This document shows, in pieces, positions 1,114-31,009 of a DNA stretch of 64,000 nucleotides. Numbering within the stretch: the first letter of the stretch is position 1; each line of letters starts with the position of its first letter. The notes below the pieces were generated by a model. It made no database searches and was not told the origin of the DNA. It saw only the letters and a program-made list of their open reading frames with translations. Origin of the DNA: Schmidtea polychroa (taxonomy: Eukaryota); NCBI GenBank assembly GCA_044892525.1, contig CM097886.1, positions 31,496,001-31,560,000 on the forward strand, given 5' to 3'. A program made the translations under genes and the position numbers.

Positions 1114-4100
1114 TGTTGGGGTTACACCTCGGCTGACCATTCTACCATGTTGGCGGGTCTAAGGGTTGATTGTCCATCTCGAATAAAAGGTGCCACCGAT
1201 TTGTCAACCTGGAGTGAAACCCCACATAACTTTCTTCCAACATAGTGCCCGTGAATCACTTCACGTTGGTACTGCACTATGCAGGCGAGACGCCAGCAAG
1301 CAGGTGAGCTTCTGCCTTAAAACTACTCCTTGCTGAGGCCTCGACTTCCCATTCACGACTGCCGATAGAAGGGCTTACGTCCATTTCCTTACACAACCAC
1401 CTATCAGGATTCGCTGAATGCAAATTGGGAAATTCTCACTAGATCTTGCGGGTTCTCTACTCAACCCACTTAATTAAAGTCTAATTATTCATGAACGAAA
1501 ACGTGTAAGACAACAAGATTTATTAATTTCAACGTTATGACACAAGGATTCAGCTGTACACTTTACTAATGTTTGTCGAAAGAAGAGAAAACATCATAAT
1601 CAACATAGATCGGATCCTTGTTCCCCATCCTGACCGCCACTGGGGTTTTATTGTTTCTCCCATTCAGTGTCGGCGAATAATTCGTCGAGGTTGAAAAACT
1701 CGGAAGCGTTCTCTTCCCACCTTACGCCAGCGGCTGATATGATTCGCGCTGAGGGTCCCGTTGTTAGGTCGATGGACACGTGAGAGTTGCCACCGTTGGT
1801 TGAGTCCTCTATTGATGGGATGTTTGGCTTTGCAGTAGCGCGCTCGCGCTGTCTCTTCTTGCGCTCTGCACGAGAGAGTTGTTTACGCTTGGGTTTGCTT
1901 GAAGATGCCACTTGCAGAAGGGTGACTGATACAGATGGACTAGCAGTGGGGGGCTTACTGGTACCCGTGATGACAACGTCTGGACGCTTGGGGGACCATT
2001 CGGTTTCGACGCAGTCTCGGCACGGTCTCTTGAACGGTGGAGATGGATTCGAGGAAAGGTTGTGATGAGGCGGAAAGATGTCATCGGCCTCTCGGATGGG
2101 AATCTGCACGATTTTTCGGGTTGTAGCCGCCTGCACGTAAACCTTATGCAGTGCCTCGGATTGTTCTCTGATTAGACTTCTTTGGGCGCGGCTCTCAGAT
2201 ATTAGCGCGTCCCGGCAATGCTCGCTACGATCGAGCTTCTTTTGGATCTCTTTCATCCGAGCGGGACTAAACCATGTCCCTTCCAGCTCGTCTATCTTCC
2301 TCTTGTAACGTCCAATCTGAGTTTGTAGGTCCTTTATCACCGTATTTTTATCCGCGCACGAGAAGCACGGCCGTAATGCCGATTTAGTGGTTGGTAGCAT
2401 GCTTGCTATAAATAATACTAATGAAATGGAGAACATACGATTTTAGAATAAATTAGATACGACCCGCGTCCATTCGTGGATACTTGACCGTCGAAAAGAA
2501 GGAAAACTTATTCTACAATCCGGCTTTACTACGGATCTTAGTTGTTAAAACAGTTTATTTAACCAAATGCCATCGGCTTGACGCATGTTATTAACTTTGA
2601 CTATCTATTGATCTAACTGTATGCATGAGGGACGTAATAATTGATAGGGTGTAAATATAATATTGGTGAAATAATATAATAATACTTTAGTAGAGGGACA
2701 TTATAGTATGCGACCAAACCTTGCTATATGTTATCTATTTTAATTTATTAAAAACAAATTACTATCGCTCTCAACATATTTTTGATTCGAAATTTGTTAT
2801 TGGAAGTGCACTTTTAATTCGGTAGGGAATGTGATTATCTATATTGTCTACCATTGGTCTGAAAATATGTGATGAGTTTACATCAGCCATTACTTTACCA
2901 CCCTCATGGAAAATCCCATCGGTCATAACATATCCAAATTTACGGATACTGCTGTCGACTGGTTGATTACATTATCGACCTATTGTGAATGTCACGTGTC
3001 GCGACTACTATGTATGCTAGTCTGATATTCTGTGCTCTCACCGCATGGATTCGTGTATGGCTACTATCTTATCTCACTCACTTGGTGTATGCCATTTTCA
3101 CGGTGATTTTATCGATCCTGCTGTTGTATGATTTTCTCTGCACAGTGATTTATTTGAGTTATGATTTATGCTACCGCCAGTTCTCATCGCGGAATTTTAC
3201 CCTTATCAACTTGTGTGAATGATCACCATCGTTTGGAAATTTATTGGATCTTTTCAGTGATCGTCGAGGGAATAATTCTACCAAATACTGGAGCATATTA
3301 CTACTCTCGTCATTCTACTCGGATTTGCCTATTCAGATGTAATGCCGTCTCGATGAAACCTGTCCTTTTCTCTCAGGTTCAATAATTTGGATATATACAG
3401 AGATGACCTGGCTCTTATTGTAGAAATAAATGTTATTAATTAAATTTGGTGATATTTTACCTGTTTATAATTTTTGAAATAACTAAGTCTATAAAAACTT
3501 TCTGATTATAATACTAGAGAGGTTTTCGTAGAATCTCGCATTTTATAGTTTCGAGTTAGTTAAAGTTTTTAGAATACTTTCGTAACTTGACATACAATCT
3601 GGACAGGTTAGATGACATTGGGTCTATGATAATGGAATTTCATACGAATTTAGTTCTACTGAGTCCGGCAAATAGACGTTGTCGCAATTAATTTGATAAA
3701 CCCATGTTTCCAGATGAAGCGTACTATGAGATGTTGTTATTTTTGACGAAGTTCACTAAATCGTGGTCTGGATCTCTTTTTTCAATAGGGGTAAGACTTA
3801 CGAAAACGACTTGACGAAAGAAGAATGCGACGCCCTTAATCACTGTGCAAATCCTTGAAAATCCCTTCATTCGTATGACTATCTTTGTGAAATCATTGTC
3901 TACCGGTTATTTTTTATCCATACCCCATTGTGATAATTTAGTCGCATCTTCAGCGATAGGACCCGTGAAGAAGCCTTCACATTTCGGCCCAATCTAGCTG
4001 CGCGATTGAAATACTCCATGTCCACCGGCTGAGCTCCCGAAGGCACCTCATACCATGACATGGAGTATCTCAACTCCACGTTACTCGTTAAATGAAAATT

Positions 4101-4955
4101 CATAAAATCTTTAATTCAGATAAAATACGGACATCTGGATAAAAATATTTTATTGATTCTGAAATACTTAAATAATACAAATTCCATCAATACGTTAAAG
4201 TTATTAAAATGGAGAATCAAATGAAGAGAGTTAACTAAAATGTTTAATCGTTAATATTTAACATTATTATTAGCTTTGCAAATACTTAAATAAATCTATA
4301 AACAAATGAAATACCCCTTACTATTGTTAGGCTGAGTCAAAATTCAATGTTGTTCGTTCCAAATAGTTCTAATGGTGGTCCGTTGGATGTCGATTATTGT
4401 GATGAATGGTATTTCGGTCTCTGAACTGGTTTTGAATAGTTGTGGAGTTTTCTGAATGACGGTTGCTTGGCTAGTAGTGTCGATCCTATGAAATGCTCGG
4501 GGTTAACAGTAAACAGTAAACATTCTTTCTTACCTATGAAATGCTCGGGGTTAACAGTAAATTTAATGTTTTTGGTAGTTGTATATATATCAAATTCTTA
4601 TTTGTGCGGACCAATCAGAGTTGAGTACCGCTTATTTCTATTAATTTAATATAATTTTCTTGTTTTTAGGTTGTTTTTTCCTTATTTTCTTTATTTTTAA
4701 TATGTTTTTCTATTTATTTCCTTAATTTCCTTATTATTTCTTGAATTCCTCTTTATTTATTTGTCAACTTGTTCTATTTTAATCTTTTCTTAATTTTATT
4801 TTTTTTTGTTTTAATTCTTATGTCTTAATTATTATTTTCCTTATATCTTATTCTATTTTATTTCTGATTTTATTTATTTTATTTTTATTTTTCTTAATGT
4901 TCTACTTCCCCACTTTCTTATTTTTCAACGATTAAATTTTCGACTCAGCCCAACA
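1114..4955 (-). repeat. 3' LTR (3,842 bp)
   Basis: TG...CA ends with a 7 bp terminal inverted repeat. Every ORF-track entry inside it recurs with identical translation 26,054 bp downstream. Confidence 0.97.
1648..2436 (-). CDS. LTR-encoded protein (262 aa), coiled coil plus basic NLS-like tract; 3' LTR copy
   Basis: Longest ORF in the LTR. CFSC and CRDC pairs, ELEGTWF, SKPKRKQLSRAERKKRQR, AATAAA at 1519-1524 (minus). A diverged homologue at 49396-49905 supports coding status. Confidence 0.8.
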   Translation of the reverse strand: MFSISLVLFIASMLPTTKSALRPCFSCADKNTVIKDLQTQIGRYKRKIDELEGTWFSPARMKEIQKKLDRSEHCRDALISESRAQRSLIREQSEALHKVYVQAATTRKIVQIPIREADDIFPPHHNLSSNPSPPFKRPCRDCVETEWSPKRPDVVITGTSKPPTASPSVSVTLLQVASSSKPKRKQLSRAERKKRQRERATAKPNIPSIEDSTNGGNSHVSIDLTTGPSARIISAAGVRWEENASEFFNLDELFADTEWEKQ

Positions 4956-5181
4956 AATCACTCGGGGACCCATCAAAATTGCGTCCCGCAATTGCATAAT
5001 TAACTTAATTCATTCATTCAAAAAAAAATATAACACGAACACTGAAAATTATACAACAATGATAAAAATTTTATTGTAAGATCAAGGTCAAAGCAAGACC
5101 AAGCAAGTATCACTTAAGGTGATAGTTGGTACATACAATAAAAGTTTCCACATATAATAACACAAATGTTTGAATTAGAGT

Positions 5182-5850
5182 TTATGAATTGTTAACCATT
5201 GATGCTTCTGCTGGCGGCTGTTGGTTGGTTTGGGTATTGATGTTGAGATAGGTCTGACTATTAGATTTCGGCTGGATTGGTTGATTACTCGGGGTTCGAG
5301 GTCGGAATGGGGTTGGGTTAAGATTTGTCAGGGGCACTTCTTGAGGATTTTGGTTCGAGGTTACTCTTATTGATGTCGAGATTCTACATCTATTTCGAAC
5401 TTCGTAAATTTTCATGAATATTGGTAGACATAGGAGGAGGGTTTCTGCGATCACCACATATATGAGATAATGGGCGTTATTGATTTCGGGAGGTATTTTT
5501 GGCTTTTCTACCAGATTTCCAAAATTCTCTTGTTGCATTTGTTGTTCCAACTGGTCGAATTGTTGAATTTGTTCGAGGATTTGTTTGTTTATCATTTTAC
5601 AAATGGGATTCTTTTTACACATTGTTTGGATGTTGTTGATGTGTGATCGGGTTGATTGAATGGTTTGGATGATATGGGTTTTTATGGTCATCGGGTATGT
5701 GCATTGACTGGATTCTTGTTTAGGTTCTTGATTTTGATTTCGGTAATCTCGTACGATTTTCGGTTGGGCGTCTATTTGTTTGCTCTCCATCAGAATCATC
5801 AATACCATCATTGTTATCATCATCTCGCCTCGCATGATACTATTATACAT
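5182..5850 (-). CDS. Putative type I membrane protein (222 aa)
   Basis: Met-rich signal-like MMITMMVLMILMESKQIDAQ, ectodomain with Cys, TM YLIYVVIAETLLLCLPIFMKI, P/Q/N-rich tail, AATAAA at 5070-5075 (minus). Confidence 0.7.
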   Translation of the reverse strand: MYNSIMRGEMMITMMVLMILMESKQIDAQPKIVRDYRNQNQEPKQESSQCTYPMTIKTHIIQTIQSTRSHINNIQTMCKKNPICKMINKQILEQIQQFDQLEQQMQQENFGNLVEKPKIPPEINNAHYLIYVVIAETLLLCLPIFMKIYEVRNRCRISTSIRVTSNQNPQEVPLTNLNPTPFRPRTPSNQPIQPKSNSQTYLNINTQTNQQPPAEASMVNNS

Positions 5851-5890
5851 TCATTATGTTTATTTACAATTGGTTTTAATGACCCTTAAT

Positions 5891-6643
5891 TTAATGGTTC
5901 TGATTTGGATTATTTTTGCCGATTCTCATCAAGGTGGACTCTGCTTTAATTACCCTGTGTCTTAACTCGGGCAGCATTTCCAATTGTCGGTCTTTTTCAC
6001 GGGCTTCTCTCTTTAGATGTCTAATTTCTTTTTCCAAGCGTCTAATTTCTTCCCTTTTCTTTTCAAGGTTTCTTTTTAGCTCGATTTGTAGGAGATCTTG
6101 TTCGTTTTCTTGCAGGTAATTTTGTTGTTGATGTTTTCTTTCTATTTCTCTATATTTGCGGACCCACTTCCTCATTTCTTTACTTTCCCGTTGGTTTTCT
6201 TCTAGTTGTCGTTTTAATTTATTTATAGCTGTTTGGCGCTCCTTCGCCTCAGTTTTCCAGTAGTCTTGGATTACCTCCTTTGCTTTGAAGCTTGCCCTCT
6301 CTTTCCATAGTTCTTCCGCTATCTTTTCCCAGTTTTTCCCTCGCTTCCTTTGTTCGTGTAGCCATTCATTTTCCTCTTCCGTTTCTCTTTTTATTTCCCC
6401 CAACGCTTCGCACTCTTTCTTTAACACCTTTATCATTTTCCGGTCCTCTAGGTATTTGTTTATTAATCTCCCGTTTTCGTATTTCTCTTCCCGTAACTCG
6501 GCCTTTAGCGTTTGTGTTTCTGTTGTTTCTGCCTCAATCTCTCCCTCTTCTACGTCGCTCATAATTTCTATCATTTCCTCGATTTTCATATCTATAATAT
6601 GTACAGTTAATGGTGCGCTATAGTGCGACTTATACGTATACAT
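5891..6643 (-). CDS. Coiled-coil accessory protein (250 aa; likely start Met19 at 6589)
   Basis: E/K/R-rich heptads with W residues similar in style to the neighbouring 369 aa ORF, no recognisable family. Confidence 0.7.
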   Translation of the reverse strand: MYTYKSHYSAPLTVHIIDMKIEEMIEIMSDVEEGEIEAETTETQTLKAELREEKYENGRLINKYLEDRKMIKVLKKECEALGEIKRETEEENEWLHEQRKRGKNWEKIAEELWKERASFKAKEVIQDYWKTEAKERQTAINKLKRQLEENQRESKEMRKWVRKYREIERKHQQQNYLQENEQDLLQIELKRNLEKKREEIRRLEKEIRHLKREAREKDRQLEMLPELRHRVIKAESTLMRIGKNNPNQNH

Positions 6644-6771
6644 TGATATAAAATTTAATAGTTTGGGTTACAGTCCCTTGAATACTTTTACAATACTTTA
6701 ATTTTTTTTTTTTTTTTTTTTTGTTTGGGATATACGTCCCGGTTTTTAGTTTTTCATCTTTTCATCCACCC

Positions 6772-7881
6772 TTATACGAAGGTTTCCTCCTGGCCTACAT
6801 AACCTTCATCACTATCGACCGCGGGATGTAACTGTATCGCAATAGGGTCGTATGGTAGGTAATATTGGGGGATTTGAGCTCTCAATTCATTAATTTCGTC
6901 TCTTAGAGCTCGAGTGATGTTCAATTCCTCGTCGAGCAGATAGGTGAGATACCTTGTCTCTTCGTCTTTCGCCTCTATCTGTTTGTCTAGGGCCTTGATT
7001 TTCTCGTCGCCCTTCCATTTTTCAATTTCTATTTCTAAGTTTTTAATATTTTCGGTGTACATTTTCCTTTCGTTTTCTAATTTTCTGTTTTTTCCCGCTA
7101 GGACCATGTTTCTTTGTTCCAGCGATCCTTGTAATCCATTAAGGTCTCTTTTCATCTCTTCTACCTGATTTACTAATTCCACAACCCGTCCCGCTTGTTG
7201 GGTTATCATCTCTTCCATTGCGGCATTCTCGTGCTCTCTTATGTCGCACTTCATTGCCAAATGTCGCTCAAACTCCATAGCCTTTGTTTGCCAGGTTTGG
7301 CTTCGGGCGGCGACCTTTCTCAACCTTTTCAATTCTTCCTTTATTATTAAATTCTCCTCCCATTTACCTTGTTCGCTTTCATATCCGAGTCTCATGGGCA
7401 ATTCTTTCATCTCTTTTTTCATTTCTCTGTTTTGTCTTTTCCATTTTCTCGCTTCTGCCACTAAGTGCATCATTTTCCTGTCTTCTATTTGTTTTTCCGC
7501 TTCGCGCTTGGTGTTCTCATCGGTAAGTCTTTTTCTCGCTTCCTGCACTAGCTGCTTTAAGTAGTGGCTGTGTGCTTCTTGGCGGGTATTTTCTAGTGAC
7601 GCCCATTTTGATGCTCTTTTGCATGCTTCTGCTTCCGCTCTTAAGTTGTGTATTAACCATTGGTATTGACTATTCTCATCTTCTCTAGTTTCTTCGATGT
7701 GATTTCGGGTGAGATTAGTTAGTTGGAACATTACTTTGTTCCATTTTTTATTATGTTCTCGGGGAATTTGTGTCTTGTTGACATTGGTTGGGGCTATCGC
7801 AGTTTCGGTTATTTTCTCTTGTGTCATCTCTAAATCATAGACATCGATTAATCTTTTTATTATGAAAAGGAATTTATTCAT
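6772..7881 (-). CDS. Long coiled-coil accessory protein (369 aa; likely start Met19 at 7827)
   Basis: Open 1.1 kb ORF, E/K/R-rich heptads, same strand as the element, no recognisable family. Confidence 0.75.
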   Translation of the reverse strand: MNKFLFIIKRLIDVYDLEMTQEKITETAIAPTNVNKTQIPREHNKKWNKVMFQLTNLTRNHIEETREDENSQYQWLIHNLRAEAEACKRASKWASLENTRQEAHSHYLKQLVQEARKRLTDENTKREAEKQIEDRKMMHLVAEARKWKRQNREMKKEMKELPMRLGYESEQGKWEENLIIKEELKRLRKVAARSQTWQTKAMEFERHLAMKCDIREHENAAMEEMITQQAGRVVELVNQVEEMKRDLNGLQGSLEQRNMVLAGKNRKLENERKMYTENIKNLEIEIEKWKGDEKIKALDKQIEAKDEETRYLTYLLDEELNITRALRDEINELRAQIPQYYLPYDPIAIQLHPAVDSDEGYVGQEETFV

Positions 7882-8019
7882 TATTTACTGTTTCTTGGGA
7901 AATTTTCGCATCATTTTTGGGTTTTCGTATTTAGGGTTTTCATACTATTATTATATAATATTTTATTGGTTATATACACCGATATATACAGATTATTATA
8001 TACAACATTATTCGATTGG

Positions 8020-9363
8020 TTACTCCGTTCTACCCTTCTCCTCTTTCCTCACGGTCATCTTGATATATATGGTATCATTTCCTGTTGCTGATCCTTCTTC
8101 GTTGAGGGGCCTCTGGTAAGCTATTTGATTCCCCGTTGTTTTGAAGCTTTGCTCATGTATACTTTGGTTGTTCATCAGAGTAATATCGATTTTTGCCTGG
8201 AACGGCCATTCTAATATTTCGTCGTATTCTCCTTTACATAACAGAAAGAAAATCGAAAAGTGCGTATCCAATCCGGTTCCGTCCCCGTTGGGATATACCT
8301 TCATTTTCATTTTGTACCCATTTTTCCAAGAATGGAATGTAGGACTTGTTATTCTTGTCTCTTCTCCGGTTTTTGCTTTTCGTATTCTTTCTTTTACTCC
8401 CGTTATTTTCCATATGTAGGGTGCTGTTGGGGTTATCTCATTTAGATTTATTTCCCGTATTTTCTGATGTAGCTCCTTGGCCTGATTATTACTGATTTCT
8501 GTTCGGTTTATTTGCATCTTTATGTTTGCTCGGGCTTCTTCGAACGCTTCCCTTTCTTCTAGTAGTTCTTTGACTAACACTTTCAACGATGTTATCTCTA
8601 TCTCCATTTGTTTTACTTTCTCTTCGCTTTCTTGTAGCGCAGTCGACCACATTTCTGCGTGAGTTGAAGCATTTTCTACTAAATGATGTGGTAACTCACC
8701 TCGGTGTAGTAGTTTCTGACAACCCCATCTACCTAGTACACATGTCATTCTTTTCTTTGCGCATTCCCTTAGATGCTGTGCCACCTTCATTATTTCCCCT
8801 TGGTTACATCCGTTTGGGCATTCCCCACTGAACTCTGCACATACTCTCTCCTCTTGGACATTGTGATGTTTGAGGGTGAGATTTATCCACGTATCTATTT
8901 CTCCACAGTGTTCACATCTTTCCAATCTCTCTTCACACTGCCTTTGATGCTCTTTTTCTTCGCTTGCTCGAATGGTTTTATGGCACCTTTCACACTGGCC
9001 AATTCTGTACATACATTCTCCCATATGTTGTACTACCTTCCATATTACTCCTTTCCATTCGCATGGGGCATTTTTGCATCCCAGGTTGGTGTTTAACATG
9101 TCTTTCACTGCGGCTTTATCCTCGTTAGTGTCTTCTAAACTCGATATTAGTGTCTCTTTACACACCGGGCACCTCTGTGGTCTATTCTTTATTGCTTCAC
9201 TGATACATTCTTTACATACTCTGCATCCACATTGCGTTTGGTGAGGTTCCTTTAACAACTTTTCACATATTCCGCACATAACATGTTTGTGTATTCTGAT
9301 CGTTGTAGATTTTCGGACTTGCTCGACAATCTCTCTGAACTCTTCTCTTTGTCGTTTATCCAT
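8020..9363 (-). CDS. Intronless TRAF-family protein (RING, TRAF zinc fingers, coiled coil, MATH)
   Basis: CGICEKLLKEPHQTQCGCRVCKEC...CPVC; CKNAPCEWKG; CEHC; CPNGC; YIWKI...SPTF...GYKMKMKVYPNGDGTG..THFSIFF....GEYDEILEWPF. The MATH C-terminus looks shortened. Confidence 0.93.
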   Translation of the reverse strand: MDKRQREEFREIVEQVRKSTTIRIHKHVMCGICEKLLKEPHQTQCGCRVCKECISEAIKNRPQRCPVCKETLISSLEDTNEDKAAVKDMLNTNLGCKNAPCEWKGVIWKVVQHMGECMYRIGQCERCHKTIRASEEKEHQRQCEERLERCEHCGEIDTWINLTLKHHNVQEERVCAEFSGECPNGCNQGEIMKVAQHLRECAKKRMTCVLGRWGCQKLLHRGELPHHLVENASTHAEMWSTALQESEEKVKQMEIEITSLKVLVKELLEEREAFEEARANIKMQINRTEISNNQAKELHQKIREINLNEITPTAPYIWKITGVKERIRKAKTGEETRITSPTFHSWKNGYKMKMKVYPNGDGTGLDTHFSIFFLLCKGEYDEILEWPFQAKIDITLMNNQSIHEQSFKTTGNQIAYQRPLNEEGSATGNDTIYIKMTVRKEEKGRTE

Positions 9364-9448
9364 TCTATAATTATATGTACAAATAGTTCTTATCGATACA
9401 GGTTCGATATTTTATTTACAATTATTTACATTTTAAGCTAGGTTTGGT

Positions 9449-9808
9449 TTAGGGTTCGGAAGAGTCGGCTTCGTGCCCGCTCTCCTCTCTATTCATTAGC
9501 CATTCCGACCAGTCTTCTATTTCTGTCTGTTCTGCTTCCTCCCTCATTCGGTCTATTTCAATTTCCTGTCGACGGCTATATTGGGTTATCCTCTCTATCT
9601 CTCTTTGCATTTGTTCGATTTTTAACCTCTGGTCTTCAATTATCTTCAAATAACTAAATCCTCTGTTCATACTCTCGATCAGGTTTCTGTGCATCGTCAG
9701 TCCTTGTTCTTGCAAATTGGACACTAATTGTGCTAATACGGCACATTGTTGCTTCCATAATTCTTCAGTTACTGTATTGTGGTTCATTTCGTTATTTCCT
9801 TGATCCAT
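9449..9808 (-). CDS. Small coiled-coil accessory protein (ATG start at 9808; ORF track starts at 9832)
   Basis: Q/E/R-rich heptad sequence, same strand as the element, acceptor-like AAATTAG before the ATG, AATAAA at 9411-9416 (minus). Confidence 0.6.
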   Translation of the reverse strand: MDQGNNEMNHNTVTEELWKQQCAVLAQLVSNLQEQGLTMHRNLIESMNRGFSYLKIIEDQRLKIEQMQREIERITQYSRRQEIEIDRMREEAEQTEIEDWSEWLMNREESGHEADSSEP

Positions 9809-9968
9809 TCCTAATTTATATACACTTTTCAACTCTTATGTAAATTTAATTTTATTTTATGATTCCCGTTATTGTATAATATTGATACCGCGCTTATATA
9901 GAGATATAGTACTGTTATATACATAAGATATACTTACTTTTTACAATTATATACAGTCATATTCCTTT

Positions 9969-12900
9969 CTATATACGTGAGTTTGGAGGGCGCTGAACGT
10001 TCCAGGCCTCCACCCACTGTCCTTGTTTGATATCACTTGGTCGTTTCACTCGATGTTGGAAGTTTCTGATTCGGGTCATTTCTAGTTCTCCGCGATGTCG
10101 TTTATCTTTAATTATTTTTATTGTTCCCCCCGTTATGATTAGGAATGCCCCTGTTATTATTATCCCACTGATCCACATCATCTGCTTCACGCTTATACTC
10201 TCTGGTTTTTCCTTGTTGGTTAATGTTGATATCGCTTCTGTACTTTTCTCGTTTCCTCTTTTGCCATTTCCTTTCATCATTTCCCGTATTCTTGCTATTT
10301 CCTCGTTCATACCCTCCTTTGCCATCTTTTGTATTTTTTCCATCTCTTCCTCCGAAACATAGTTGTCCTGAGCTTCCTCACCAGTTTTCTTGTGCTTTCC
10401 TCCTTCGTTCTTTTCGTCGTGGTTTTTTCTTTTCTTTCCTCTTTTCCCCGGGTATCGTCGGCATTCTCTTTTTGATTCATTCCTCCAGATACAAACCGTG
10501 TATTCTTTCGGCGGCTGCTGCTGCGTCACATATTGATGGCATCTCTCACCTGGTCCTAATCTTGAAATACAGACTTTGTGCTCTTTTCTAGGTTGGATCT
10601 GCGTTATTACTACTTCACCACCTTTTCCTAGGTGTACCTCTTTTCCTTTGACGTTCGTTATTCTCTTCCCGTCTCGATTTCGGTATGCTTCTTGTATTCT
10701 TACTTCTGTTATTGGTTCTGTGTCCTCATTTATCAGTACTAATTTCTGATACGCTCTAGACATGCATCTTCCTAGTATGCACTTTTCCTTTAAGTCCCAT
10801 TCTTCCTTTAAATCCCACTGCTGCTCTTGTGCTTGCTTTCTCTTTTCTTGTTTTAGTTCATCCTCTTTGCTATCTTGATTCTCCGCTTCTTTGGTTTCTT
10901 TTATCGTTCTCGTCCCTCCCTGAGCTGTTACTAACTCTATCATGGTAAGCATAATTATCATTAATATCATATTTGTCTCTATTTCTTTGTTAGTGAAAGG
11001 TAGGCATACCCTCTGTTTTCCATTATTCGATTTTTCCTCCTCTTTGGTCTTGGTTCTCGGGCTGTTTCCCTCTCTTTTCGTATCCGAATCCTTGTTTTCT
11101 GGTTTACCCTCCTCCGGTTCTCTTTTCTCTTTATCCTCCTTTCGGTCTTTTCCGTTATTGTCATCGTGTTTATCTCCCTCGCTGTCATTTAAAATGTCGT
11201 CCTCGACATTTATATCGCTCAATAATCTGCGATATGCTGTTAGCACTCTGTTTCTTGCTAATTTTGCTTCGAATTCAAACTCTTTTCTACCCGTTGCAGC
11301 ATGTCTCTTTCTATTCCATTCTTTAACTAACTCTCTCAATTGCATACGACGATGTTTCCCAATTCGTTGTTGCTCGTTCTGATTTTGCGTGAATTTTAGG
11401 TCTTCTCTATTTAATACTATTAAAATAATTTTAGGCGTCCCCCCCTTAGTTAGGGTATTCTTTACCATCGCATTTTCTCCGTTTTCGTAGAATTCGTTTA
11501 CATTTATCGCATATTTATTATTTGGTGGTACTCTCCAGGTTAATAATAATTTCATTGCTTCTAGATTTTTCCGTACCGTATTCCATTGAAACTGAGATGT
11601 GTTTTTGCACATATTTTCAACTTCTTCTTCTGTCGCATTTTTGCAAATAAATCTGATCATTTCTAAGTTTGGCTGTATGGTTGCCCAGTCCAAGGTGGAA
11701 TTTCCTTCATTGGACCTTTCGTCTAGTTTCGATCCTGATTGATGTAGGATGTGGAGTGTTTTTGGGTGTATTTTCGTTATAGCTGCATACATCATGGCGG
11801 TTTCACCTTGTTCATTTTTCGTGTTGGTTTCCTCGCCCATCTCCCCAAGGATTCTCATGATCGTTATTGCTCTATTCTCTTTTGCAGCTAGTATTGCTTG
11901 TTGTAGGGGTGTTCGGGAATCCTTCGTTACCATCGTAAATGCTCGAGGCAAGAAGGTTTTGATTTTCCCGATATCTAAACCCGTGGTTTGATCTCTTGCG
12001 TATGTGTGTACGGCTTTTATTATTTTGGACAATATTATTTCGTCTGGCAGCTCTAGCATTTCCTCAAAGAACACTTCTTTTGCTTTGCGTATTATTGCCT
12101 CTTGATCTATACTCATTGATTTGGTTTCGATGACGTTGTTTGTGACCGTTCGGTTCGTTGTTGACTTTGATTCCCTGGATTTCTCATACCTTATTTTCGT
12201 TTTCTTTCCGTTTGGATTATTGATTCGTTCCTCTGCTGTAAGTATTTGGATAATATCCATGTAATTCTCGCGGATGTTATTCATCGTGTCCATCATATAT
12301 AACACACTTACTGTTTCCCAATATTTATGTCGTACTTGGTTAGTAAATTGGAATAGTGATTTTTCGAATGTGTCGATTCGCTTTTTTGTTAACTGTTCGT
12401 CTTTGTGATTTGTGAATTTTATCCCTCGTTCTAGTAATTGATTCGGGATTTCGAATAAATGATGTCCTTTCATAGCTTCTCTCATCAGCGTGTTCTCTCC
12501 TCTCGTGAACGCTTCGTTTACGTTGATCATATAATCGTTTCGAATTGGATTTCTCCATGTAATTAATATTCCGGTAATTGTCGTCAGTTTTTCTTTGATC
12601 GCTGTTAGCAATCCATCATACATGTTTCCGACTTCCCGATTGTCCTCATATGATAGTAGTTCCATCAATGACGTGAACGCCTCGGTACTTCTCCCTCTGA
12701 TAGCATGATGTAGAGCGTTTTTCCGCTCGTGGTCTTGTGTAGTTATTTTCGATCCGGTATCGAGTAATGCGGTTATAATGTCTTTTGTTTTGCCTCTGTT
12801 TGCGGCCATCATTAATGGTGTGTAACCTTGGTTGTTTGTTTGTTCTGTTGATCGCTTGCAGTCGTGAAATGCTTCTATTGTTTCTAGTATTTGCTCGTTG

Positions 12901-25129: not shown

Positions 25130-25759
25130 TTACGACTGGCTGGCACTATTCAACAGCTCAATCTTCTTCCTTCTGATCGGTTAGACTATTCAACAACTCG
25201 ATCTTACGACTGGCTGGCACTATTCAACAGCTCAATCTTCCTCCTTCCTGATCGGTTGGACTTTTCACAACTCGACCTTACGACTGGCTGGCACTATTCA
25301 ACAGCTCAATCTTCTTCCTTCTGATCGGTTGGATTATTCAACAACTCGATCTTACGACTGGCTGGCACTATTCAACAGCTCAATCTTCCTCCTTCCTGAT
25401 CGGTTGGACTTTTCACAACTCGACCTTACGACTGGCTGGCACTATTCAACAGCTCAATCTTCTTCCTTCTGATCGGTTGGACTATTCAACAACTCGATCT
25501 TACGACTGGCTGGCACTATTCAACAGCTCAATCTTCCTCCTTCCTGATCGGTTGGACTTTTCACAACTCGACCTTACGACTGGCTGGCACTATTCAACAG
25601 CTCAATCTTCTTCCTTCTGATCGGTTGGACTATTCAACAACTCGATCTTACGACTGGCTGGCACTATTCAACAGCTCAATCTTCCTCCTTCCTGATCGGT
25701 TGGACTTTTCACAACTCGACCTTACGACTGGCTGGCACTATTCAACAGCTCAATCTTCT
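25130..25759. repeat. Tandem array of 8.5 x 74 bp units alternating two variants (148 bp higher-order unit)
   Basis: Units start TTACGACTGGCTGGCACTATTCAACAGCTCAATCTTC at 25130, 25204, 25278, 25352, 25426, 25500, 25574, 25648 and 25722 (partial). A units end CTCGATC and B units end CTCGACC. Confidence 0.95.
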
Positions 25760-26339: not shown

Positions 26340-26825
26340 TCATTCGCCATAATAGACCATATGGGTCTCTTTTATTTCATATTTGCACATCGTGCATCTT
26401 TTTAGGTCTTTTACACACTCTTCACAGTGACTGAGGTGTCCACACGGCAAGAATAATACGCGAATAGGACGGAGTTTGCAGGCTATACAAGTTCGTAATT
26501 GGTTAACTTTTTCCTGTATTTTTTGTTCGATTGCATCTGGTATTGTATTTAGTGAGTCTTTTAGACGCTGATAATCTAGATTTAATGTTGGGTGGTTCAA
26601 TCTCTCTTGATACCACTGATATACGGTTTCGGGGTTTATTTTTCCATCTGGGCGACTTAGGCCTGTGGCTAATATCATATGATTAGGTACGACTGGTGTT
26701 TGTCCGATTGCTTGCAGTAATATCGCGTTGATTTTTTCTCTTTTATGCGTCAGTGTTGTTAGGGAGTCGTTTTCTATATCGATAAACTTGAGCAGTTGTT
26801 GCATTTGGTTCGCGAATTCTGTCAT
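26340..26825 (-). CDS. 161 aa protein with C-terminal IAP/MYLIP-type C3HC4 RING (putative E3 ligase)
   Basis: CIACKLRPIRVLFLPCGHLSHCEECVKDLKRCTMCKYEI at the extreme C-terminus. Acceptor-like TTTTCCAACAG lies 2 nt before the ATG, with AATAAA at 26191-26196 (minus). Confidence 0.85.
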   Translation of the reverse strand: MTEFANQMQQLLKFIDIENDSLTTLTHKREKINAILLQAIGQTPVVPNHMILATGLSRPDGKINPETVYQWYQERLNHPTLNLDYQRLKDSLNTIPDAIEQKIQEKVNQLRTCIACKLRPIRVLFLPCGHLSHCEECVKDLKRCTMCKYEIKETHMVYYGE

Positions 26826-27142
26826 AGCTGTTGGAAAAGTAATGTTTTAATAATATGTAGTAAATTAATAGTTAATTCGTTAATTGGTTTCTTTAACCAT
26901 TGTTAATTATTTAATTTGACTACTTTATCTCCTTTATTTATATATATCCTTAATTTTTCTATTATCTACATTTTGATTTTCTCTACTTAGTTCCTAATAT
27001 AATTTAATAATCAATAGTCACTTTGCATTCGTCAAGCAATGGTCGGTTGAAAATAGAAAATCGATGTGATAAATCCCTTTAATTTTGTATGAAACTCCCG
27101 GTGAATTTCGCATTCGTTAATAGAAATTTCGATCGACTGTAG

Positions 27143-27160
27143 ATCCCGGCTGAGCCCCCA
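27143..27160 (-). promoter_or_regulatory. Primer binding site, tRNA-Pro type
   Basis: Minus strand reads TGGGGGCTCAGCCGGGAT, 7 nt inside the 5' LTR end. This is 16/18 identical to the classical tRNA-Pro PBS TGGGGGCTCGTCCGGGAT and complementary to a tRNA end ...ATCCCGG-CTGAGCC-C-CCA. Confidence 0.85.
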
Positions 27161-27167
27161 AAAATCA

Positions 27168-30100
27168 TGTTGGGGTTACACCTCGGCTGACCATTCTACC
27201 ATGTTGGCGGGTCTAAGGGTTGATTGTCCATCTCGAATAAAAGGTGCCACCGATTTGTCAACCTGGAGTGAAACCCCACATAACTTTCTTCCAACATAGT
27301 GCCCGTGAATCACTTCACGTTGGTACTGCACTATGCAGGCGAGACGCCAGCAAGCAGGTGAGCTTCTGCCTTAAAACTACTCCTTGCTGAGGCCTCGACT
27401 TCCCATTCACGACTGCCGATAGAAGGGCTTACGTCCATTTCCTTACACAACCACCTATCAGGATTCGCTGAATGCAAATTGGGAAATTCTCACTAGATCT
27501 TGCGGGTTCTCTACTCAACCCACTTAATTAAAGTCTAATTATTCATGAACGAAAACGTGTAAGACAACAAGATTTATTAATTTCAACGTTATGACACAAG
27601 GATTCAGCTGTACACTTTACTAATGTTTGTCGAAAGAAGAGAAAACATCATAATCAACATAGATCGGATCCTTGTTCCCCATCCTGACCGCCACTGGGGT
27701 TTTATTGTTTCTCCCATTCAGTGTCGGCGAATAATTCGTCGAGGTTGAAAAACTCGGAAGCGTTCTCTTCCCACCTTACGCCAGCGGCTGATATGATTCG
27801 CGCTGAGGGTCCCGTTGTTAGGTCGATGGACACGTGAGAGTTGCCACCGTTGGTTGAGTCCTCTATTGATGGGATGTTTGGCTTTGCAGTAGCGCGCTCG
27901 CGCTGTCTCTTCTTGCGCTCTGCACGAGAGAGTTGTTTACGCTTGGGTTTGCTTGAAGATGCCACTTGCAGAAGGGTGACTGATACAGATGGACTAGCAG
28001 TGGGGGGCTTACTGGTACCCGTGATGACAACGTCTGGACGCTTGGGGGACCATTCGGTTTCGACGCAGTCTCGGCACGGTCTCTTGAACGGTGGAGATGG
28101 ATTCGAGGAAAGGTTGTGATGAGGCGGAAAGATGTCATCGGCCTCTCGGATGGGAATCTGCACGATTTTTCGGGTTGTAGCCGCCTGCACGTAAACCTTA
28201 TGCAGTGCCTCGGATTGTTCTCTGATTAGACTTCTTTGGGCGCGGCTCTCAGATATTAGCGCGTCCCGGCAATGCTCGCTACGATCGAGCTTCTTTTGGA
28301 TCTCTTTCATCCGAGCGGGACTAAACCATGTCCCTTCCAGCTCGTCTATCTTCCTCTTGTAACGTCCAATCTGAGTTTGTAGGTCCTTTATCACCGTATT
28401 TTTATCCGCGCACGAGAAGCACGGCCGTAATGCCGATTTAGTGGTTGGTAGCATGCTTGCTATAAATAATACTAATGAAATGGAGAACATACGATTTTAG
28501 AATAAATTAGATACGACCCGCGTCCATTCGTGGATACTTGACCGTCGAAAAGAAGGAAAACTTATTCTACAATCCGGCTTTACTACGGATCTTAGTTGTT
28601 AAAACAGTTTATTTAACCAAATGCCATCGGCTTGACGCATGTTATTAACTTTGACTATCTATTGATCTAACTGTATGCATGAGGGACGTAATAATTGATA
28701 GGGTGTAAATATAATATTGGTGAAATAATATAATAATACTTTAGTAGAGGGACATTATAGTATGCGACCAAACCTTGCTATATGTTATCTATTTTAATTT
28801 ATTAAAAACAAATTACTATCGCTCTCAACATATTTTTGATTCGAAATTTGTTATTGGAAGTGCACTTTTAATTCGGTAGGGAATGTGATTATCTATATTG
28901 TCTACCATTGGTCTGAAAATATGTGATGAGTTTACATCAGCCATTACTTTACCACCCTCATGGAAAATCCCATCGGTCATAACATATCCAAATTTACGGA
29001 TACTGCTGTCGACTGGTTGATTACATTATCGACCTATTGTGAATGTCACGTGTCGCGACTACTATGTATGCTAGTCTGATATTCTGTGCTCTCACCGCAT
29101 GGATTCGTGTATGGCTACTATCTTATCTCACTCACTTGGTGTATGCCATTTTCACGGTGATTTTATCGATCCTGCTGTTGTATGATTTTCTCTGCACAGT
29201 GATTTATTTGAGTTATGATTTATGCTACCGCCAGTTCTCATCGCGGAATTTTACCCTTATCAACTTGTGTGAATGATCACCATCGTTTGGAAATTTATTG
29301 GATCTTTTCAGTGATCGTCGAGGGAATAATTCTACCAAATACTGGAGCATATTACTACTCTCGTCATTCTACTCGGATTTGCCTATTCAGATGTAATGCC
29401 GTCTCGATGAAACCTGTCCTTTTCTCTCAGGTTCAATAATTTGGATATATACAGAGATGACCTGGCTCTTATTGTAGAAATAAATGTTATTAATTAAATT
29501 TGGTGATATTTTACCTGTTTATAATTTTTGAAATAACTAAGTCTATAAAAACTTTCTGATTATAATACTAGAGAGGTTTTCGTAGAATCTCGCATTTTAT
29601 AGTTTCGAGTTAGTTAAAGTTTTTAGAATACTTTCGTAACTTGACATACAATCTGGACAGGTTAGATGACATTGGGTCTATGATAATGGAATTTCATACG
29701 AATTTAGTTCTACTGAGTCCGGCAAATAGACGTTGTCGCAATTAATTTGATAAACCCATGTTTCCAGATGAAGCGTACTATGAGATGTTGTTATTTTTGA
29801 CGAAGTTCACTAAATCGTGGTCTGGATCTCTTTTTTCAATAGGGGTAAGACTTACGAAAACGACTTGACGAAAGAAGAATGCGACGCCCTTAATCACTGT
29901 GCAAATCCTTGAAAATCCCTTCATTCGTATGACTATCTTTGTGAAATCATTGTCTACCGGTTATTTTTTATCCATACCCCATTGTGATAATTTAGTCGCA
30001 TCTTCAGCGATAGGACCCGTGAAGAAGCCTTCACATTTCGGCCCAATCTAGCTGCGCGATTGAAATACTCCATGTCCACCGGCTGAGCTCCCGAAGGCAC

Positions 30101-31009
30101 CTCATACCATGACATGGAGTATCTCAACTCCACGTTACTCGTTAAATGAAAATTCATAAAATCTTTAATTCAGATAAAATACGGACATCTGGATAAAAAT
30201 ATTTTATTGATTCTGAAATACTTAAATAATACAAATTCCATCAATACGTTAAAGTTATTAAAATGGAGAATCAAATGAAGAGAGTTAACTAAAATGTTTA
30301 ATCGTTAATATTTAACATTATTATTAGCTTTGCAAATACTTAAATAAATCTATAAACAAATGAAATACCCCTTACTATTGTTAGGCTGAGTCAAAATTCA
30401 ATGTTGTTCGTTCCAAATAGTTCTAATGGTGGTCCGTTGGATGTCGATTATTGTGATGAATGGTATTTCGGTCTCTGAACTGGTTTTGAATAGTTGTGGA
30501 GTTTTCTGAATGACGGTTGCTTGGCTAGTAGTGTCGATCCTATGAAATGCTCGGGGTTAACAGTAAACAGTAAACATTCTTTCTTACCTATGAAATGCTC
30601 GGGGTTAACAGTAAATTTAATGTTTTTGGTAGTTGTATATATATCAAATTCTTATTTGTGCGGACCAATCAGAGTTGAGTACCGCTTATTTCTATTAATT
30701 TAATATAATTTTCTTGTTTTTAGGTTGTTTTTTCCTTATTTTCTTTATTTTTAATATGTTTTTCTATTTATTTCCTTAATTTCCTTATTATTTCTTGAAT
30801 TCCTCTTTATTTATTTGTCAACTTGTTCTATTTTAATCTTTTCTTAATTTTATTTTTTTTTGTTTTAATTCTTATGTCTTAATTATTATTTTCCTTATAT
30901 CTTATTCTATTTTATTTCTGATTTTATTTATTTTATTTTTATTTTTCTTAATGTTCTACTTCCCCACTTTCTTATTTTTCAACGATTAAATTTTCGACTC
31001 AGCCCAACA
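27168..31009 (-). repeat. 5' LTR (3,842 bp)
   Basis: Copy of 1114-4955, followed on the minus strand by the PBS. Confidence 0.97.
27702..28490 (-). CDS. LTR-encoded protein (262 aa); 5' LTR copy
   Basis: Identical translation to 1648-2436. Confidence 0.8.
   Translation of the reverse strand: MFSISLVLFIASMLPTTKSALRPCFSCADKNTVIKDLQTQIGRYKRKIDELEGTWFSPARMKEIQKKLDRSEHCRDALISESRAQRSLIREQSEALHKVYVQAATTRKIVQIPIREADDIFPPHHNLSSNPSPPFKRPCRDCVETEWSPKRPDVVITGTSKPPTASPSVSVTLLQVASSSKPKRKQLSRAERKKRQRERATAKPNIPSIEDSTNGGNSHVSIDLTTGPSARIISAAGVRWEENASEFFNLDELFADTEWEKQ

What the first reader, a model, noticed from the sequence alone, without database searches (positions are those of the whole stretch)
1114..31009. 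A 30 kb enveloped retroelement carrying a cell-death / NF-kB control kit
Seen: one LTR element encodes an IAP-type RING, Ubl and death-fold-like segments, a Bcl-2-like domain, ankyrin repeats and a full TRAF, plus an envelope protein. Established: these are the families that large DNA viruses (pox-, baculo-, herpesviruses) capture to block apoptosis and innate signalling (vBcl-2, vIAP, ankyrin IkB mimics, TRAF binders), whereas typical Ty3/gypsy elements are 5-15 kb with only gag/pol/env. Inference: this is a virus-like retroelement that keeps its host cell alive or immunologically quiet. Giant 'Burro' gypsy elements are known from planarians, so this may be a member or relative and the class itself may not be new.
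Basis: partly seen in the sequence, partly recalled or inferred. Interest (0 to 1): 0.95.

Follow-up and report, generated by a model that had tools for sequence, protein, structure and literature searches.

The report
Intact giant Burro-type planarian retroelement
This is a complete, very recently inserted 29.9 kb copy of a giant "Burro"-type gypsy retrovirus-like element that carries its own envelope gene and host-like ubiquitin and cell-death signalling genes; it is real and striking, but the class, its gene content and the idea that it meddles with host apoptosis were already published.

Summary
Window 1114-31009 (minus strand) is one LTR retroelement. Its two 3,842-bp LTRs are 100% identical, end in TG..CA and are flanked by a 4-bp target duplication. 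No gene is broken.

One 4,617-codon ORF encodes Gag with three CCHC knuckles, a ubiquitin-like domain, a Bcl-2-like domain, a class III envelope protein (Pfam E 5e-70), PR-RT-RNaseH-IN, two duplicated ankyrin modules and a C-terminal membrane module. Separate ORFs encode an IAP-type RING without BIR (E 2e-10 to cIAP2) and a full TRAF (E 1e-24 to TRAF1/2/3).

- **Weak homology:** the Ubl and Bcl-2-like calls are remote (best E 0.0046 and 0.008), but both are conserved in distant relatives.
- **Not found:** death-fold, BIR and dUTPase.
- **Not new:** Arkhipova & Yushenova 2019 (PMC6431247), citing Jurka 2007 and Grohme 2018, describe Burro elements with this repertoire, in-frame env and the apoptosis/ubiquitin hypothesis.
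- **Function:** untested.

My increments are three. TRAF is a complete downstream gene here. A UGUAWAUA motif follows the stop codons of the 3' gene cassette. Four hydrophobic segments suggest a membrane-threaded polyprotein.

Interest is moderate to low.

The parts
27168..31009 (-). 5' LTR (3,842 bp, TG..CA); contains a 262-aa ORF at 27702-28490
   Evidence: 100% identical to the other LTR
1114..4955 (-). 3' LTR (3,842 bp); the same ORF lies at 1648-2436
1110..1113 (.). Target-site duplication CTCG, left copy
31010..31013 (.). Target-site duplication CTCG, right copy
27142..27160 (-). Primer-binding-site-like sequence starting TGG, 7 nt after the 5' LTR; the tRNA was not identified
   Evidence: no tRNA gene in the window; inference from sequence
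26340..26825 (-). Leader ORF, 161 aa: IAP-type C3HC4 RING at residues ~100-156, no BIR
25130..25759 (-). Tandem array in the 2.5 kb leader, 8.5 copies of 74 bp (148-bp higher-order unit)
9969..23822 (-). Giant ORF, 4,617 codons, intact: Gag - accessory - Env - Pol - accessory
   Evidence: 0 internal stops
22893..23822 (-). Gag: Retrotrans_gag plus three CCHC knuckles (aa 1-310)
20838..22256 (-). Conserved accessory region (aa 523-995) holding two candidate beta-grasp modules; 32% identical to P0001
   Evidence: fold unconfirmed
20127..20375 (-). Ubiquitin-like domain (aa 1150-1232)
19128..19550 (-). Bcl-2-like helical domain (aa 1425-1565) with a BH2-type GGW motif
17043..19037 (-). Envelope: internal signal peptide, class III fusion ectodomain, TM at aa 2177-2197, tail (aa 1596-2260)
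16359..16634 (-). Aspartic protease (aa 2397-2488)
15219..15695 (-). Reverse transcriptase (aa 2710-2868), YxDD present
14643..15032 (-). RNase H (aa 2931-3060)
13752..14321 (-). Integrase: H2C2 zinc domain plus core (aa 3168-3357)
12393..13055 (-). Ankyrin module 1 (aa 3590-3810)
11370..12035 (-). Ankyrin module 2 (aa 3930-4151), a diverged duplicate of module 1
9972..10982 (-). C-terminal membrane module (aa 4281-4617): hydrophobic segment, ~250-aa Cys-containing stretch, TM, short tail
   Evidence: no homologue found
9449..9832 (-). ORF of ~119 aa counted from its first ATG; acidic and helical; no family
8020..9363 (-). TRAF gene, 447 aa: RING, TRAF zinc fingers, coiled coil, MATH/TRAF-C
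6772..7881 (-). ORF of 369 aa, charged coiled-coil type, no family; an A21 run follows it
5891..6643 (-). ORF of 250 aa, highly charged coiled-coil type, no family
5182..5850 (-). ORF of 222 aa: signal-peptide-like N-terminus, one TM at residues 126-151, P/Q/N-rich tail
5860..9955 (-). Span holding nine UGUAWAUA motifs, all in the intercistronic spacers of the 3' cassette

Best explanation
The region is an intact, very young provirus-like copy of a Burro-type giant Ty3/gypsy element, the kind known from dugesiid planarians.

Shown: identical LTRs with a target-site duplication, and a Gag-Env-Pol backbone in one reading frame. Added to that backbone are a ubiquitin-like domain and a Bcl-2-like domain just before Env, two ankyrin modules and a small membrane module after integrase, an IAP-type RING gene in the leader, and a 3' cassette of five ORFs that includes a complete TRAF.

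Inferred: the full-length RNA is translated into a polyprotein threaded through the ER membrane by four hydrophobic segments. Gag, Ubl, Bcl-2-like, Pol and ankyrin parts would stay cytosolic, and Env and the C-terminal module would face the lumen. Signal peptidase and the element's protease would cut it into pieces. The class III Env would let particles pass between cells.

Also inferred: the host-derived modules (RING E3, TRAF adaptor, Ubl, Bcl-2-like, ankyrin) most likely act on the host's ubiquitin, TRAF and apoptosis pathways so that the producing cell survives. I put about 0.9 on the identity and anatomy and about 0.45 on this function.
For: Anatomy.

Domain identities. Remote-level calls: 47, 65, 68, 96.

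Match to the published Burro description (PMC6431247):
- total size over 30 kb
- giant ORF1 starting with Gag and three CCHC knuckles
- env in frame between gag and pol, with mononegavirus-type hits
- BCL2-like motif before env, and a Ubl before that
- MATH/TRAF, RING, ankyrin and tandem repeats

Conservation of the accessory parts in other elements:
- P0001 is 32% identical over 471 aa.
- L002 is colinear from the Ubl through the Bcl-2-like domain into Env, E 4e-19.
- L003 has a Ubl and a Bcl-2-like domain with GGW before Env.
- P0003 is a TRAF at 36% identity.
- Env shares 14 of 16 and 12 of 12 cysteines with its two relatives.

Base composition is uniform across core and accessory modules (A 38-47%, GC3 0.35-0.44). 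This argues for long residence in the element rather than fresh capture.

The giant ORF has four hydrophobic segments, an even number.

BURRO1 RNA is expressed in differentiated intestinal cells and rises when SMEDWI-2 is lost (PMC8532177).
Against: - No expression, protein or activity data exist for this copy.
- Bcl-2 and Ubl homology is remote. Pfam scores fall below the gathering cut-offs, both AlphaFold models were poor (pLDDT 48 and 42), and Foldseek found nothing significant.
- No BIR or death-fold domain was found. The ankyrin repeats show no specific likeness to IkB.
- No reference Burro sequence was available, so family assignment rests on architecture and on relatives of unknown origin.
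- The organism could not be identified.
- The topology and processing model is inference only.
- With identical LTRs, the intactness of this one copy says nothing about selection on it.
Confidence: 0.6

Rival explanations
1. Same element, but the accessory modules serve its own life cycle and not host cell-death control. Ubl and RING/TRAF E3 activity would mark Gag or Env for sorting and budding, or remove host restriction factors. The ankyrin modules would be adaptors. The Bcl-2-like fold would be a membrane-associated structural domain next to Env.
For: The Ubl and Bcl-2-like domains sit inside the structural half of the polyprotein, between Gag and Env, in all relatives that have them. The BH1 region is not recognisably conserved; only the BH2-type motif is. 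RING and TRAF are E3-ligase and adaptor architectures with many roles besides cell death.
Against: The combination of Bcl-2-like domain, IAP-type RING and TRAF consists of families known for apoptosis and TNF/NF-kB-type signalling (established knowledge). None of these modules is needed by ordinary Ty3/gypsy elements. Relative L004 has Gag-Env-Pol in one frame without them.
Confidence: 0.25
2. The extra domains are passenger fragments of host genes picked up during reverse transcription. They are carried along without function.
For: An encoded A21 run lies directly after the 369-aa ORF, which looks like the footprint of a captured polyadenylated mRNA. TRAF modules move between polyprotein and stand-alone positions in different families.
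Against: The modules remain alignable as protein at 22-36% identity between elements whose DNA no longer aligns. All frames are open. Composition matches that of pol. The ankyrin duplication is old (25% identity) yet both copies are intact.
Confidence: 0.08
3. The 30 kb unit is an assembly chimera, or a nest of several elements and host genes that happens to lie between two LTRs.
For: Its size is unusual, and TRAF-like host sequence lies nearby (RING plus zf-TRAF ORF at 36976-37587).
Against: - The LTRs are identical, with matching 4-bp duplications.
- Every ORF is on one strand with 40-138 bp spacers.
- Composition is uniform inside and drops sharply to 26-30% GC outside.
- There is no internal LTR or second pol.
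- The same gene order is published for Burro.
- The nearby host ORF is only 34% identical, over 44 residues.
Confidence: 0.02

Closest known systems
[quoted passage not shown] 2018; Arkhipova & Yushenova 2019, PMC6431247)
   Same: A giant gypsy-type LTR element of about 30 kb. It has one huge ORF starting with Gag and three CCHC knuckles, env in frame between gag and pol, a Ubl then a BCL2-like motif before env, PR-RT-RH-IN, ankyrin, RING, a MATH/TRAF module, coiled-coil ('Smc') ORFs and tandem repeats.
   Different: Here ORF1 is 4,617 aa, not 4,873. MATH is not in the polyprotein; an acidic linker occupies the place where relative P0001 carries MATH. TRAF is instead a complete RING-ZnF-CC-MATH gene downstream of pol. 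No BIR or dUTPase-like domain was detected. Sequence identity to Burro1 could not be measured.
Burro-like element of Dugesia (Girardia) tigrina (PMC6431247)
   Same: The polyprotein lacks MATH, which is encoded by a separate accessory ORF. Gag-Env-Pol lie in one frame.
   Different: There the accessory ORF is upstream, ORF1 is 5,140 aa with a midasin-like region, and Gag has two CCHC knuckles. Here TRAF is downstream, the upstream ORF is an IAP-type RING, and Gag has three knuckles.
GAG-ENV-POL 'errantivirus' Ty3/gypsy elements with class III (gB-type) Env in Platyhelminthes, Nematoda and Bryozoa (Chary & Hayashi, eLife 2026, PMC13524379)
   Same: Gene order gag-env-pol, class III fusion protein, Ty3/gypsy pol. 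Relative L004 found here is of this plain type, with one 2,693-aa frame.
   Different: Those elements are of ordinary size and are not described with Ubl, Bcl-2-like, ankyrin, TRAF or RING additions.
Anti-apoptotic and signalling mimics of large DNA viruses (viral Bcl-2, viral IAP, ankyrin host-range proteins); comparison from general knowledge
   Same: The same host families are borrowed by a virus-like entity.
   Different: Here the carrier is a reverse-transcribing LTR element. The modules are largely fused into the Gag-Pol polyprotein. No activity has been shown, there is no BIR, and the Bcl-2 likeness is remote.
Flavivirus/pestivirus-type polyproteins threaded through the ER membrane; analogy from general knowledge
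   Same: One polyprotein with internal signal and anchor segments that alternate cytosolic and lumenal parts. The capsid-side protein ends at a signal sequence.
   Different: Analogy of topology only, with no homology. It is predicted here from four hydrophobic segments and is not demonstrated.

Membership tests
Ty3/gypsy (Metaviridae) LTR retroelement | LTRs with TG..CA ends and a short target-site duplication | tested here: met
Ty3/gypsy (Metaviridae) LTR retroelement | Pol order PR-RT-RNaseH-IN, with integrase after RT | tested here: met
   residues 2397-2488, 2710-2868, 2931-3060, 3168-3357
Ty3/gypsy (Metaviridae) LTR retroelement | RT groups with Ty3/gypsy in a phylogeny | not testable with these tools
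   No reference RT set (GyDB, Repbase) was available. Pfam RT_RNaseH and RT_RNaseH_2 hits (E 7e-39) are typical of the group, but that is not a phylogeny.
Burro giant elements of planarians | Total length near or above 30 kb with multi-kb LTRs | tested here: met
   29,896 bp; LTRs of 3,842 bp; compare PMC6431247
Burro giant elements of planarians | One giant ORF beginning with Gag and CCHC knuckles, with env in frame between gag and pol | tested here: met
Burro giant elements of planarians | Accessory set: MATH/TRAF, RING, Ubl, BCL2-like, ankyrin, tandem repeats | tested here: met
   BIR and dUTPase-like, reported for Burro1, were not found.
Burro giant elements of planarians | Sequence similarity to a published Burro reference; host is a dugesiid planarian | not testable with these tools
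   No reference sequence or planarian genome was reachable. The window's proteins are absent from the protein collection. Flanks at 26-30% GC fit the >70% A/T reported for S. mediterranea (PMC11410931).
Bcl-2 family | Helical bundle with BH1 and BH2 motifs, recognised by the family profile | tested here: inconclusive
   Pfam Bcl-2 scored 14.8 bits against a cut-off of 31.4. The four-sequence profile reached E 0.008 with only Bcl-xL at the top, mainly over the BH2 region. Eight helices are predicted, but the model is poor. BH1 is not recognisable.
IAP family | At least one BIR domain | tested here: not met
   Only the C-terminal IAP-type RING is present. No BIR appears in any ORF of the element.
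TRAF family | N-terminal RING, TRAF zinc fingers, coiled coil, C-terminal TRAF-C/MATH | tested here: met
Ubiquitin-like (beta-grasp) domains | Recognised by a ubiquitin-family profile over the full domain | tested here: inconclusive
   Residues 1150-1232: Pfam E 0.044 here and 0.0046 in L003. All 5 PDB profile hits are ubiquitin folds, but at E 0.35-0.9. The two upstream candidates are unsupported.
Death-fold (DD/DED/CARD/PYD) | Match to any death-fold profile or structure | tested here: not met
   No hit up to E = 1. A fold-level test was not possible because the models were poor.
IkB-type ankyrin proteins | Specific similarity to IkB beyond generic ankyrin repeats | tested here: not met
   The top matches are ankyrins, latrotoxin, KIDINS220 and designed repeat proteins.
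Class III viral fusion glycoproteins (rhabdovirus G / gB-like, Pfam PF24664) | Family profile match over the ectodomain, signal peptide, C-terminal TM, conserved cysteines | tested here: met

The most novel reading that the evidence does not exclude
Beyond the published description, this family may run a retroviral genome like a small polycistronic chromosome.

(a) The five ORFs after pol may be separated by a dedicated gene-end signal. UGUAWAUA appears in 1-3 copies, the first starting 13-22 nt after the stop codon. The motif matches both the PUF/Pumilio recognition consensus and a UGUA-type 3'-processing element. It would allow separate mRNAs, for instance by 3' processing plus trans-splicing, or cell-type-specific repression.

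(b) The 4,617-aa polyprotein may be threaded through the ER membrane, so that cleavage at the Env signal peptide leaves the Bcl-2-like domain with a C-terminal hydrophobic anchor. That is the topology of cellular Bcl-2 proteins.

(c) Env may let the element move from permissive differentiated cells into the stem cells that found the next generation.
Probability: 0.2. Interest if true: 0.6.

Novelty: already known. Interest (0 to 1): 0.33.

Why it matters
Burro elements show that a reverse-transcribing element can grow to 30 kb and gather a set of host-derived signalling genes that was thought typical of large DNA viruses. They make up a sizeable share of planarian genomes. What those genes do remains open.

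This copy is useful as a clean, uninterrupted example with exact bounds. It also shows that the TRAF module can exist as a complete separate gene. The relatives found here suggest stepwise growth: plain Gag-Env-Pol (L004), then Ubl and Bcl-2-like added (L003, L002), then the full giant. None of this changes the published picture, so the practical value is annotation and a few testable details.

Tried and rejected
**Searches with little or no yield**
- A word-index protein search with the accessory N-terminal region gave no hit, because candidate length is tied to the 4,617-aa parent.
- Exact look-up of all eight ORFs found none in the collection, so the organism could not be identified.
- An exhaustive HMMER search with residues 400-1599 found only two relatives, both UniParc/MetaClust entries without context.
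- phmmer against the PDB found nothing for the accessory N-terminal region, for Env, or for the Bcl-2-like segment alone.
- A scan of viral contigs with Env found no relative.
- The rest of the window holds no second Burro copy and no DNA similarity to the element.
- The original Burro paper (Grohme 2018) is not held in the library, so Burro-2, -3 and -4 could not be compared.

**Structure predictions that failed**
- The single-sequence AlphaFold model of the Bcl-2-like segment had pLDDT 48. Foldseek gave no match below E = 1. Several Mcl-1, sponge and herpesvirus Bcl-2 entries appear among the noise, which I count only as a hint.
- The AlphaFold model of residues 590-1230 with a three-row alignment had pLDDT 42 and was unusable, so I did not send it to a fold search.

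**Domain tests that were negative**
- hhalign among the three candidate Ubl modules: Ubl2 against Ubl3 gave only 22% probability, and Ubl1 gave nothing.
- dUTPase between PR and RT was not detected.
- L004 was tested for a Bcl-2-like domain and rejected, with no GGW motif and 11% identity.

**Readings rejected**
- Internal TATA promoters as the meaning of the spacer motif. The copy before the 222-aa ORF lies only 10-18 nt from its ATG.
- The bacterial-type promoter and terminator scan of the LTR is uninformative for a eukaryote.

1. I stopped and used it in no tool. The Bcl-2 verdict rests only.
2. While reading tool-printed gene bounds of a metagenomic relative, I worked out in my reasoning where its frame is interrupted. 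I do not repeat that place here.

Full report
**1. What is there**

A direct-repeat search and BLAST show two long terminal repeats, at 1114-4955 and 27168-31009. They are 3,842 bp long and identical. The one mismatch BLAST reported lies in the three bases outside the true TG..CA termini. A 4-bp duplication, CTCG, flanks the element at 1110-1113 and 31010-31013.

The element is 29,896 bp, which matches the finding's coordinates. GC is about 39% inside and 26-30% outside. The coding (minus) strand is strongly A-rich. The window has no N. All genes lie on the minus strand, and none is interrupted.

**2. Gene map, 5' to 3' on the minus strand**

- The 5' LTR contains a 262-aa ORF with no family.
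- A TGG-initiated primer-binding-like sequence lies 7 nt after the LTR.
- A 161-aa ORF has a C-terminus that is an IAP-type RING. Pfam zf-C3HC4_3 gives E 3.4e-11. The best solved relatives are the cIAP2, cIAP1 and XIAP RINGs, E 2.4e-10. It has no BIR.
- A 2.5 kb non-coding leader holds 8.5 copies of a 74-bp repeat.
- A single 4,617-codon ORF follows.
- Five further ORFs of about 119, 447, 369, 250 and 222 aa are separated by 40-138 bp.

The 447-aa ORF is a complete TRAF with RING, TRAF zinc fingers, coiled coil and MATH. The TRAF1/2/3 TRAF-C domain gives E about 1e-24. TRAF6 RING-ZnF aligns over residues 28-154 at E 1.5e-14. The 369- and 250-aa ORFs are highly charged coiled-coil types. The 222-aa ORF looks like a small type I membrane protein.

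**3. The giant ORF**

Pfam gives these assignments:

| Module | Residues | Support |
|---|---|---|
| Retrotrans_gag | 52-145 | Pfam |
| Three CCHC knuckles | 252-302 | Pfam, regex |
| Monjiviricetes_fusion glycoprotein | about 1600-2207 | E 5.3e-70 |
| Protease | 2397-2488 | Pfam, D[ST]G present |
| Reverse transcriptase | 2710-2868 | Pfam, YxDD present |
| RNase H | 2931-3060 | Pfam |
| Integrase | 3168-3357 | Pfam |
| Ankyrin repeats | two blocks | Pfam, PDB |

The two ankyrin modules (3590-3810 and 3930-4151) are old duplicates of each other, 25% identical, E 5e-14. They match generic ankyrin proteins, not IkB specifically.

The C-terminal 340 residues have a hydrophobic segment, a cysteine-containing stretch and a transmembrane segment, with no relatives.

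**4. The weakly supported domains**

*Ubiquitin-like (residues 1150-1232).* Pfam ubiquitin gives E 0.044. The homologous segment of relative L003 gives E 0.0046. A two-sequence profile finds only ubiquitin-fold chains in the PDB, full length, but at E 0.35-0.9.

*Two upstream candidate beta-grasp modules.* They lie within residues 648-930. They have a beta-beta-alpha pattern in a poor model and a weak PI3K_rbd hit, but no real support.

*Bcl-2-like (about 1425-1565).* Pfam Bcl-2 scores 14.8 bits, E 0.043, below the cut-off. A three-sequence profile puts Bcl-xL or Bcl-2 in the top 52 PDB hits at E 0.18. Adding a fourth natural relative improves this to E 0.008, with Bax also listed and one alignment spanning profile positions 73-140. 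Improvement on adding relatives, and a conserved GGW motif at the BH2 position in three elements, favour true remote homology. The single-sequence AlphaFold model predicts eight helices but is poor (pLDDT 48), and its fold search is not significant.

*Death-fold.* Nothing was found.

*dUTPase-like and BIR.* Both are reported for Burro1. Neither was detected here.

**5. Relatives**

Public protein collections hold very few.

- **P0001** (882 aa) is 32% identical over 471 residues of the region between Gag and the Ubl. It carries a MATH domain where the window's element has an acidic linker.
- **P0002 and P0003** share TRAF zinc fingers. In P0002 they are fused after the polyprotein segment. In P0003 they are part of a stand-alone RING-ZnF protein that is 36% identical to the window's TRAF. 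The TRAF module therefore moves between polyprotein and separate gene.
- **Four metagenome contigs** carry related Env proteins at 25-40% identity.
  - L002 is colinear with the window from the Ubl through the Bcl-2-like domain and signal peptide into Env, E 4e-19.
  - L003 has Gag, one Ubl and a Bcl-2-like domain before Env.
  - L004 is a plain 2,693-aa Gag-Env-PR-RT-RH-IN frame with none of the additions. Its pol is 35-41% identical to the window's.
- **Env cysteines** are shared 14 of 16 and 12 of 12 with P0004 and P0005.

The short contigs are not all intact:
- L001 shows one change of frame upstream of env, and a stop between env and protease.
- L002 shows one stop within env.
- L003 shows one stop between the Bcl-2-like region and env.

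I did not examine these further. The series suggests that accessory modules were added step by step to a Gag-Env-Pol backbone. That is inference.

**6. Signs of long residence and of capture**

Base composition and third-position usage are the same in core and accessory modules. The accessory modules are therefore not fresh acquisitions. An encoded run of 21 A directly after the 369-aa ORF looks like the trace of a captured polyadenylated mRNA, which is also inference.

**7. A motif not mentioned in the literature I could read**

UGUAWAUA occurs 11 times on the element's coding strand. Nine of these lie in the 527 nt of spacers between the 3' ORFs, where 0.04 would be expected. The first copy starts 13-22 nt after the stop codons of the giant ORF, the 119-aa ORF, TRAF and the 250-aa ORF.

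Its constant distance from the upstream stop suggests a gene-end or 3'-UTR signal. It could be a 3'-processing element or a PUF-type binding site. It is not a promoter, since one copy lies 10-18 nt from the next ATG.

**8. How it probably works**

*Shown.* The parts list of an enveloped Ty3/gypsy provirus is complete and open.

*Inferred.*
- The giant ORF has four hydrophobic segments, at 1601-1611, 2177-2197, 4284-4299 and 4551-4565.
- With that even number, Gag, Ubl, the Bcl-2-like domain, Pol and the ankyrin modules would remain cytosolic. Env and the C-terminal module would enter the ER lumen, as in membrane-threaded viral polyproteins.
- Cleavage after the Env signal peptide would leave the Bcl-2-like domain next to a hydrophobic C-terminal anchor.
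- The RING, TRAF, Ubl, Bcl-2-like and ankyrin modules belong to families that in animals handle ubiquitin transfer, TNF-receptor/NF-kB-type signalling and mitochondrial apoptosis (established knowledge).
- The most likely use is to keep the producing cell alive and to bend its signalling.
- A rival is that they serve particle assembly or remove restriction factors.
- Published work shows BURRO1 RNA in differentiated intestinal cells and its rise on loss of the PIWI protein SMEDWI-2 (PMC8532177).
- An Env would then give a route from such cells to stem cells. This is also inference.

**9. Comparison with what is known**

Arkhipova and Yushenova (2019, PMC6431247), summarising Jurka (2007) and Grohme et al. 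(2018), describe Burro elements as follows:
- more than 30 kb long, in thousands of copies
- a 4,873-aa ORF1 with Gag and three CCHC knuckles
- MATH_TRAF_C, a SUMO-like Ubl and BCL2-like modules
- env in frame between gag and pol, with mononegavirus glycoprotein hits
- PR, dUTPase-like, RT, RH and IN
- ankyrin, BIR, RING, Smc-like motifs and tandem repeats

They state that accessory ORFs may alternatively be polyprotein subdomains, and that the element may meddle with apoptosis and ubiquitination. Chary and Hayashi (2026, PMC13524379) describe GAG-ENV-POL elements with class III Env in flatworms.

The window's element fits this description feature by feature. It differs in detail:
- a shorter ORF1
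- TRAF as a full downstream gene
- a RING-only leader ORF
- no BIR or dUTPase detected

**10. Verdict**

The functional idea is plausible, unproven and already published. I rate novelty as 'already known'; at most this is another member of the Burro group. Interest is 0.33.

**11. Slips**

In my reasoning I once recalled a human Bcl-2-family stretch from memory, and once worked out the place of an interruption in a relative contig.

Noticed in passing
window 5860-9955, minus strand: UGUAWAUA (TGTAWATA) motif: nine copies confined to the spacers between the ORFs downstream of pol. The first copy starts 13-22 nt after four of the stop codons. About 0.04 copies are expected by composition. It matches the PUF/Pumilio recognition consensus and UGUA-type 3'-processing elements.
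   Followed up: partly
window 6700-6722 (spacer 6644-6771), minus strand: A run of 21 A is encoded directly after the 369-aa ORF. It may be the footprint of a captured polyadenylated host mRNA.
   Followed up: no
window 27702-28490 and 1648-2436 (minus); 49396-49905 (plus): The 262-aa ORF inside each LTR has a paralogue elsewhere in the window (30% identity over 88 aa, pairwise E 1e-8), with a shared ELEGTWF motif. The paralogue lies in a GC-rich island at about 47.6-50.3 kb. Both have GC3 of about 0.53, unlike the rest of the element. The island might be an LTR of another family.
   Followed up: partly
window 36976-37587, minus strand: An ORF outside the element has RING, zf-TRAF and Sina zinc-finger hits. 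It is probably an exon of a host TRAF/SIAH-like gene, 6 kb from the element. It is only 34% identical to the element's TRAF, over 44 residues.
   Followed up: partly
window 708-803 and 36748-36843: A 96-bp direct repeat, 79% identical, lies in the left flank of the element and next to the host RING/zf-TRAF ORF. It is a dispersed repeat of unknown kind.
   Followed up: no
window 63837-64000, minus strand: A match to the 3' end of eukaryotic SSU rRNA (Rfam RF01960, 51.3 bits, just above threshold), cut by the window edge. No 5.8S or LSU follows, so it may be an rDNA fragment.
   Followed up: no
window 58533-60818, plus strand: A 761-aa ORF in a 37-41% GC island has no Pfam match. By eye it looks like a transposase-type or domesticated transposon protein. 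Two further ORFs lie opposite it at 61566-62815.
   Followed up: no
window 46486-47463: A very AT-rich array (16-23% GC) of degenerate repeats of about 115-156 bp.
   Followed up: no
giant ORF residues 4281-4617 (window 9972-10982) and ORF 5182-5850: Two small type I membrane-protein-like modules have similar methionine/isoleucine-rich signal-like N-termini, also resembling the Env signal peptide. Neither has any detectable relative.
   Followed up: partly
P0002, P0003 (relatives): Near-identical TRAF zinc-finger stretches occur in two contexts: fused behind the polyprotein segment, and in a stand-alone RING-ZnF protein. This is evidence of module shuffling within a related family.
   Followed up: partly
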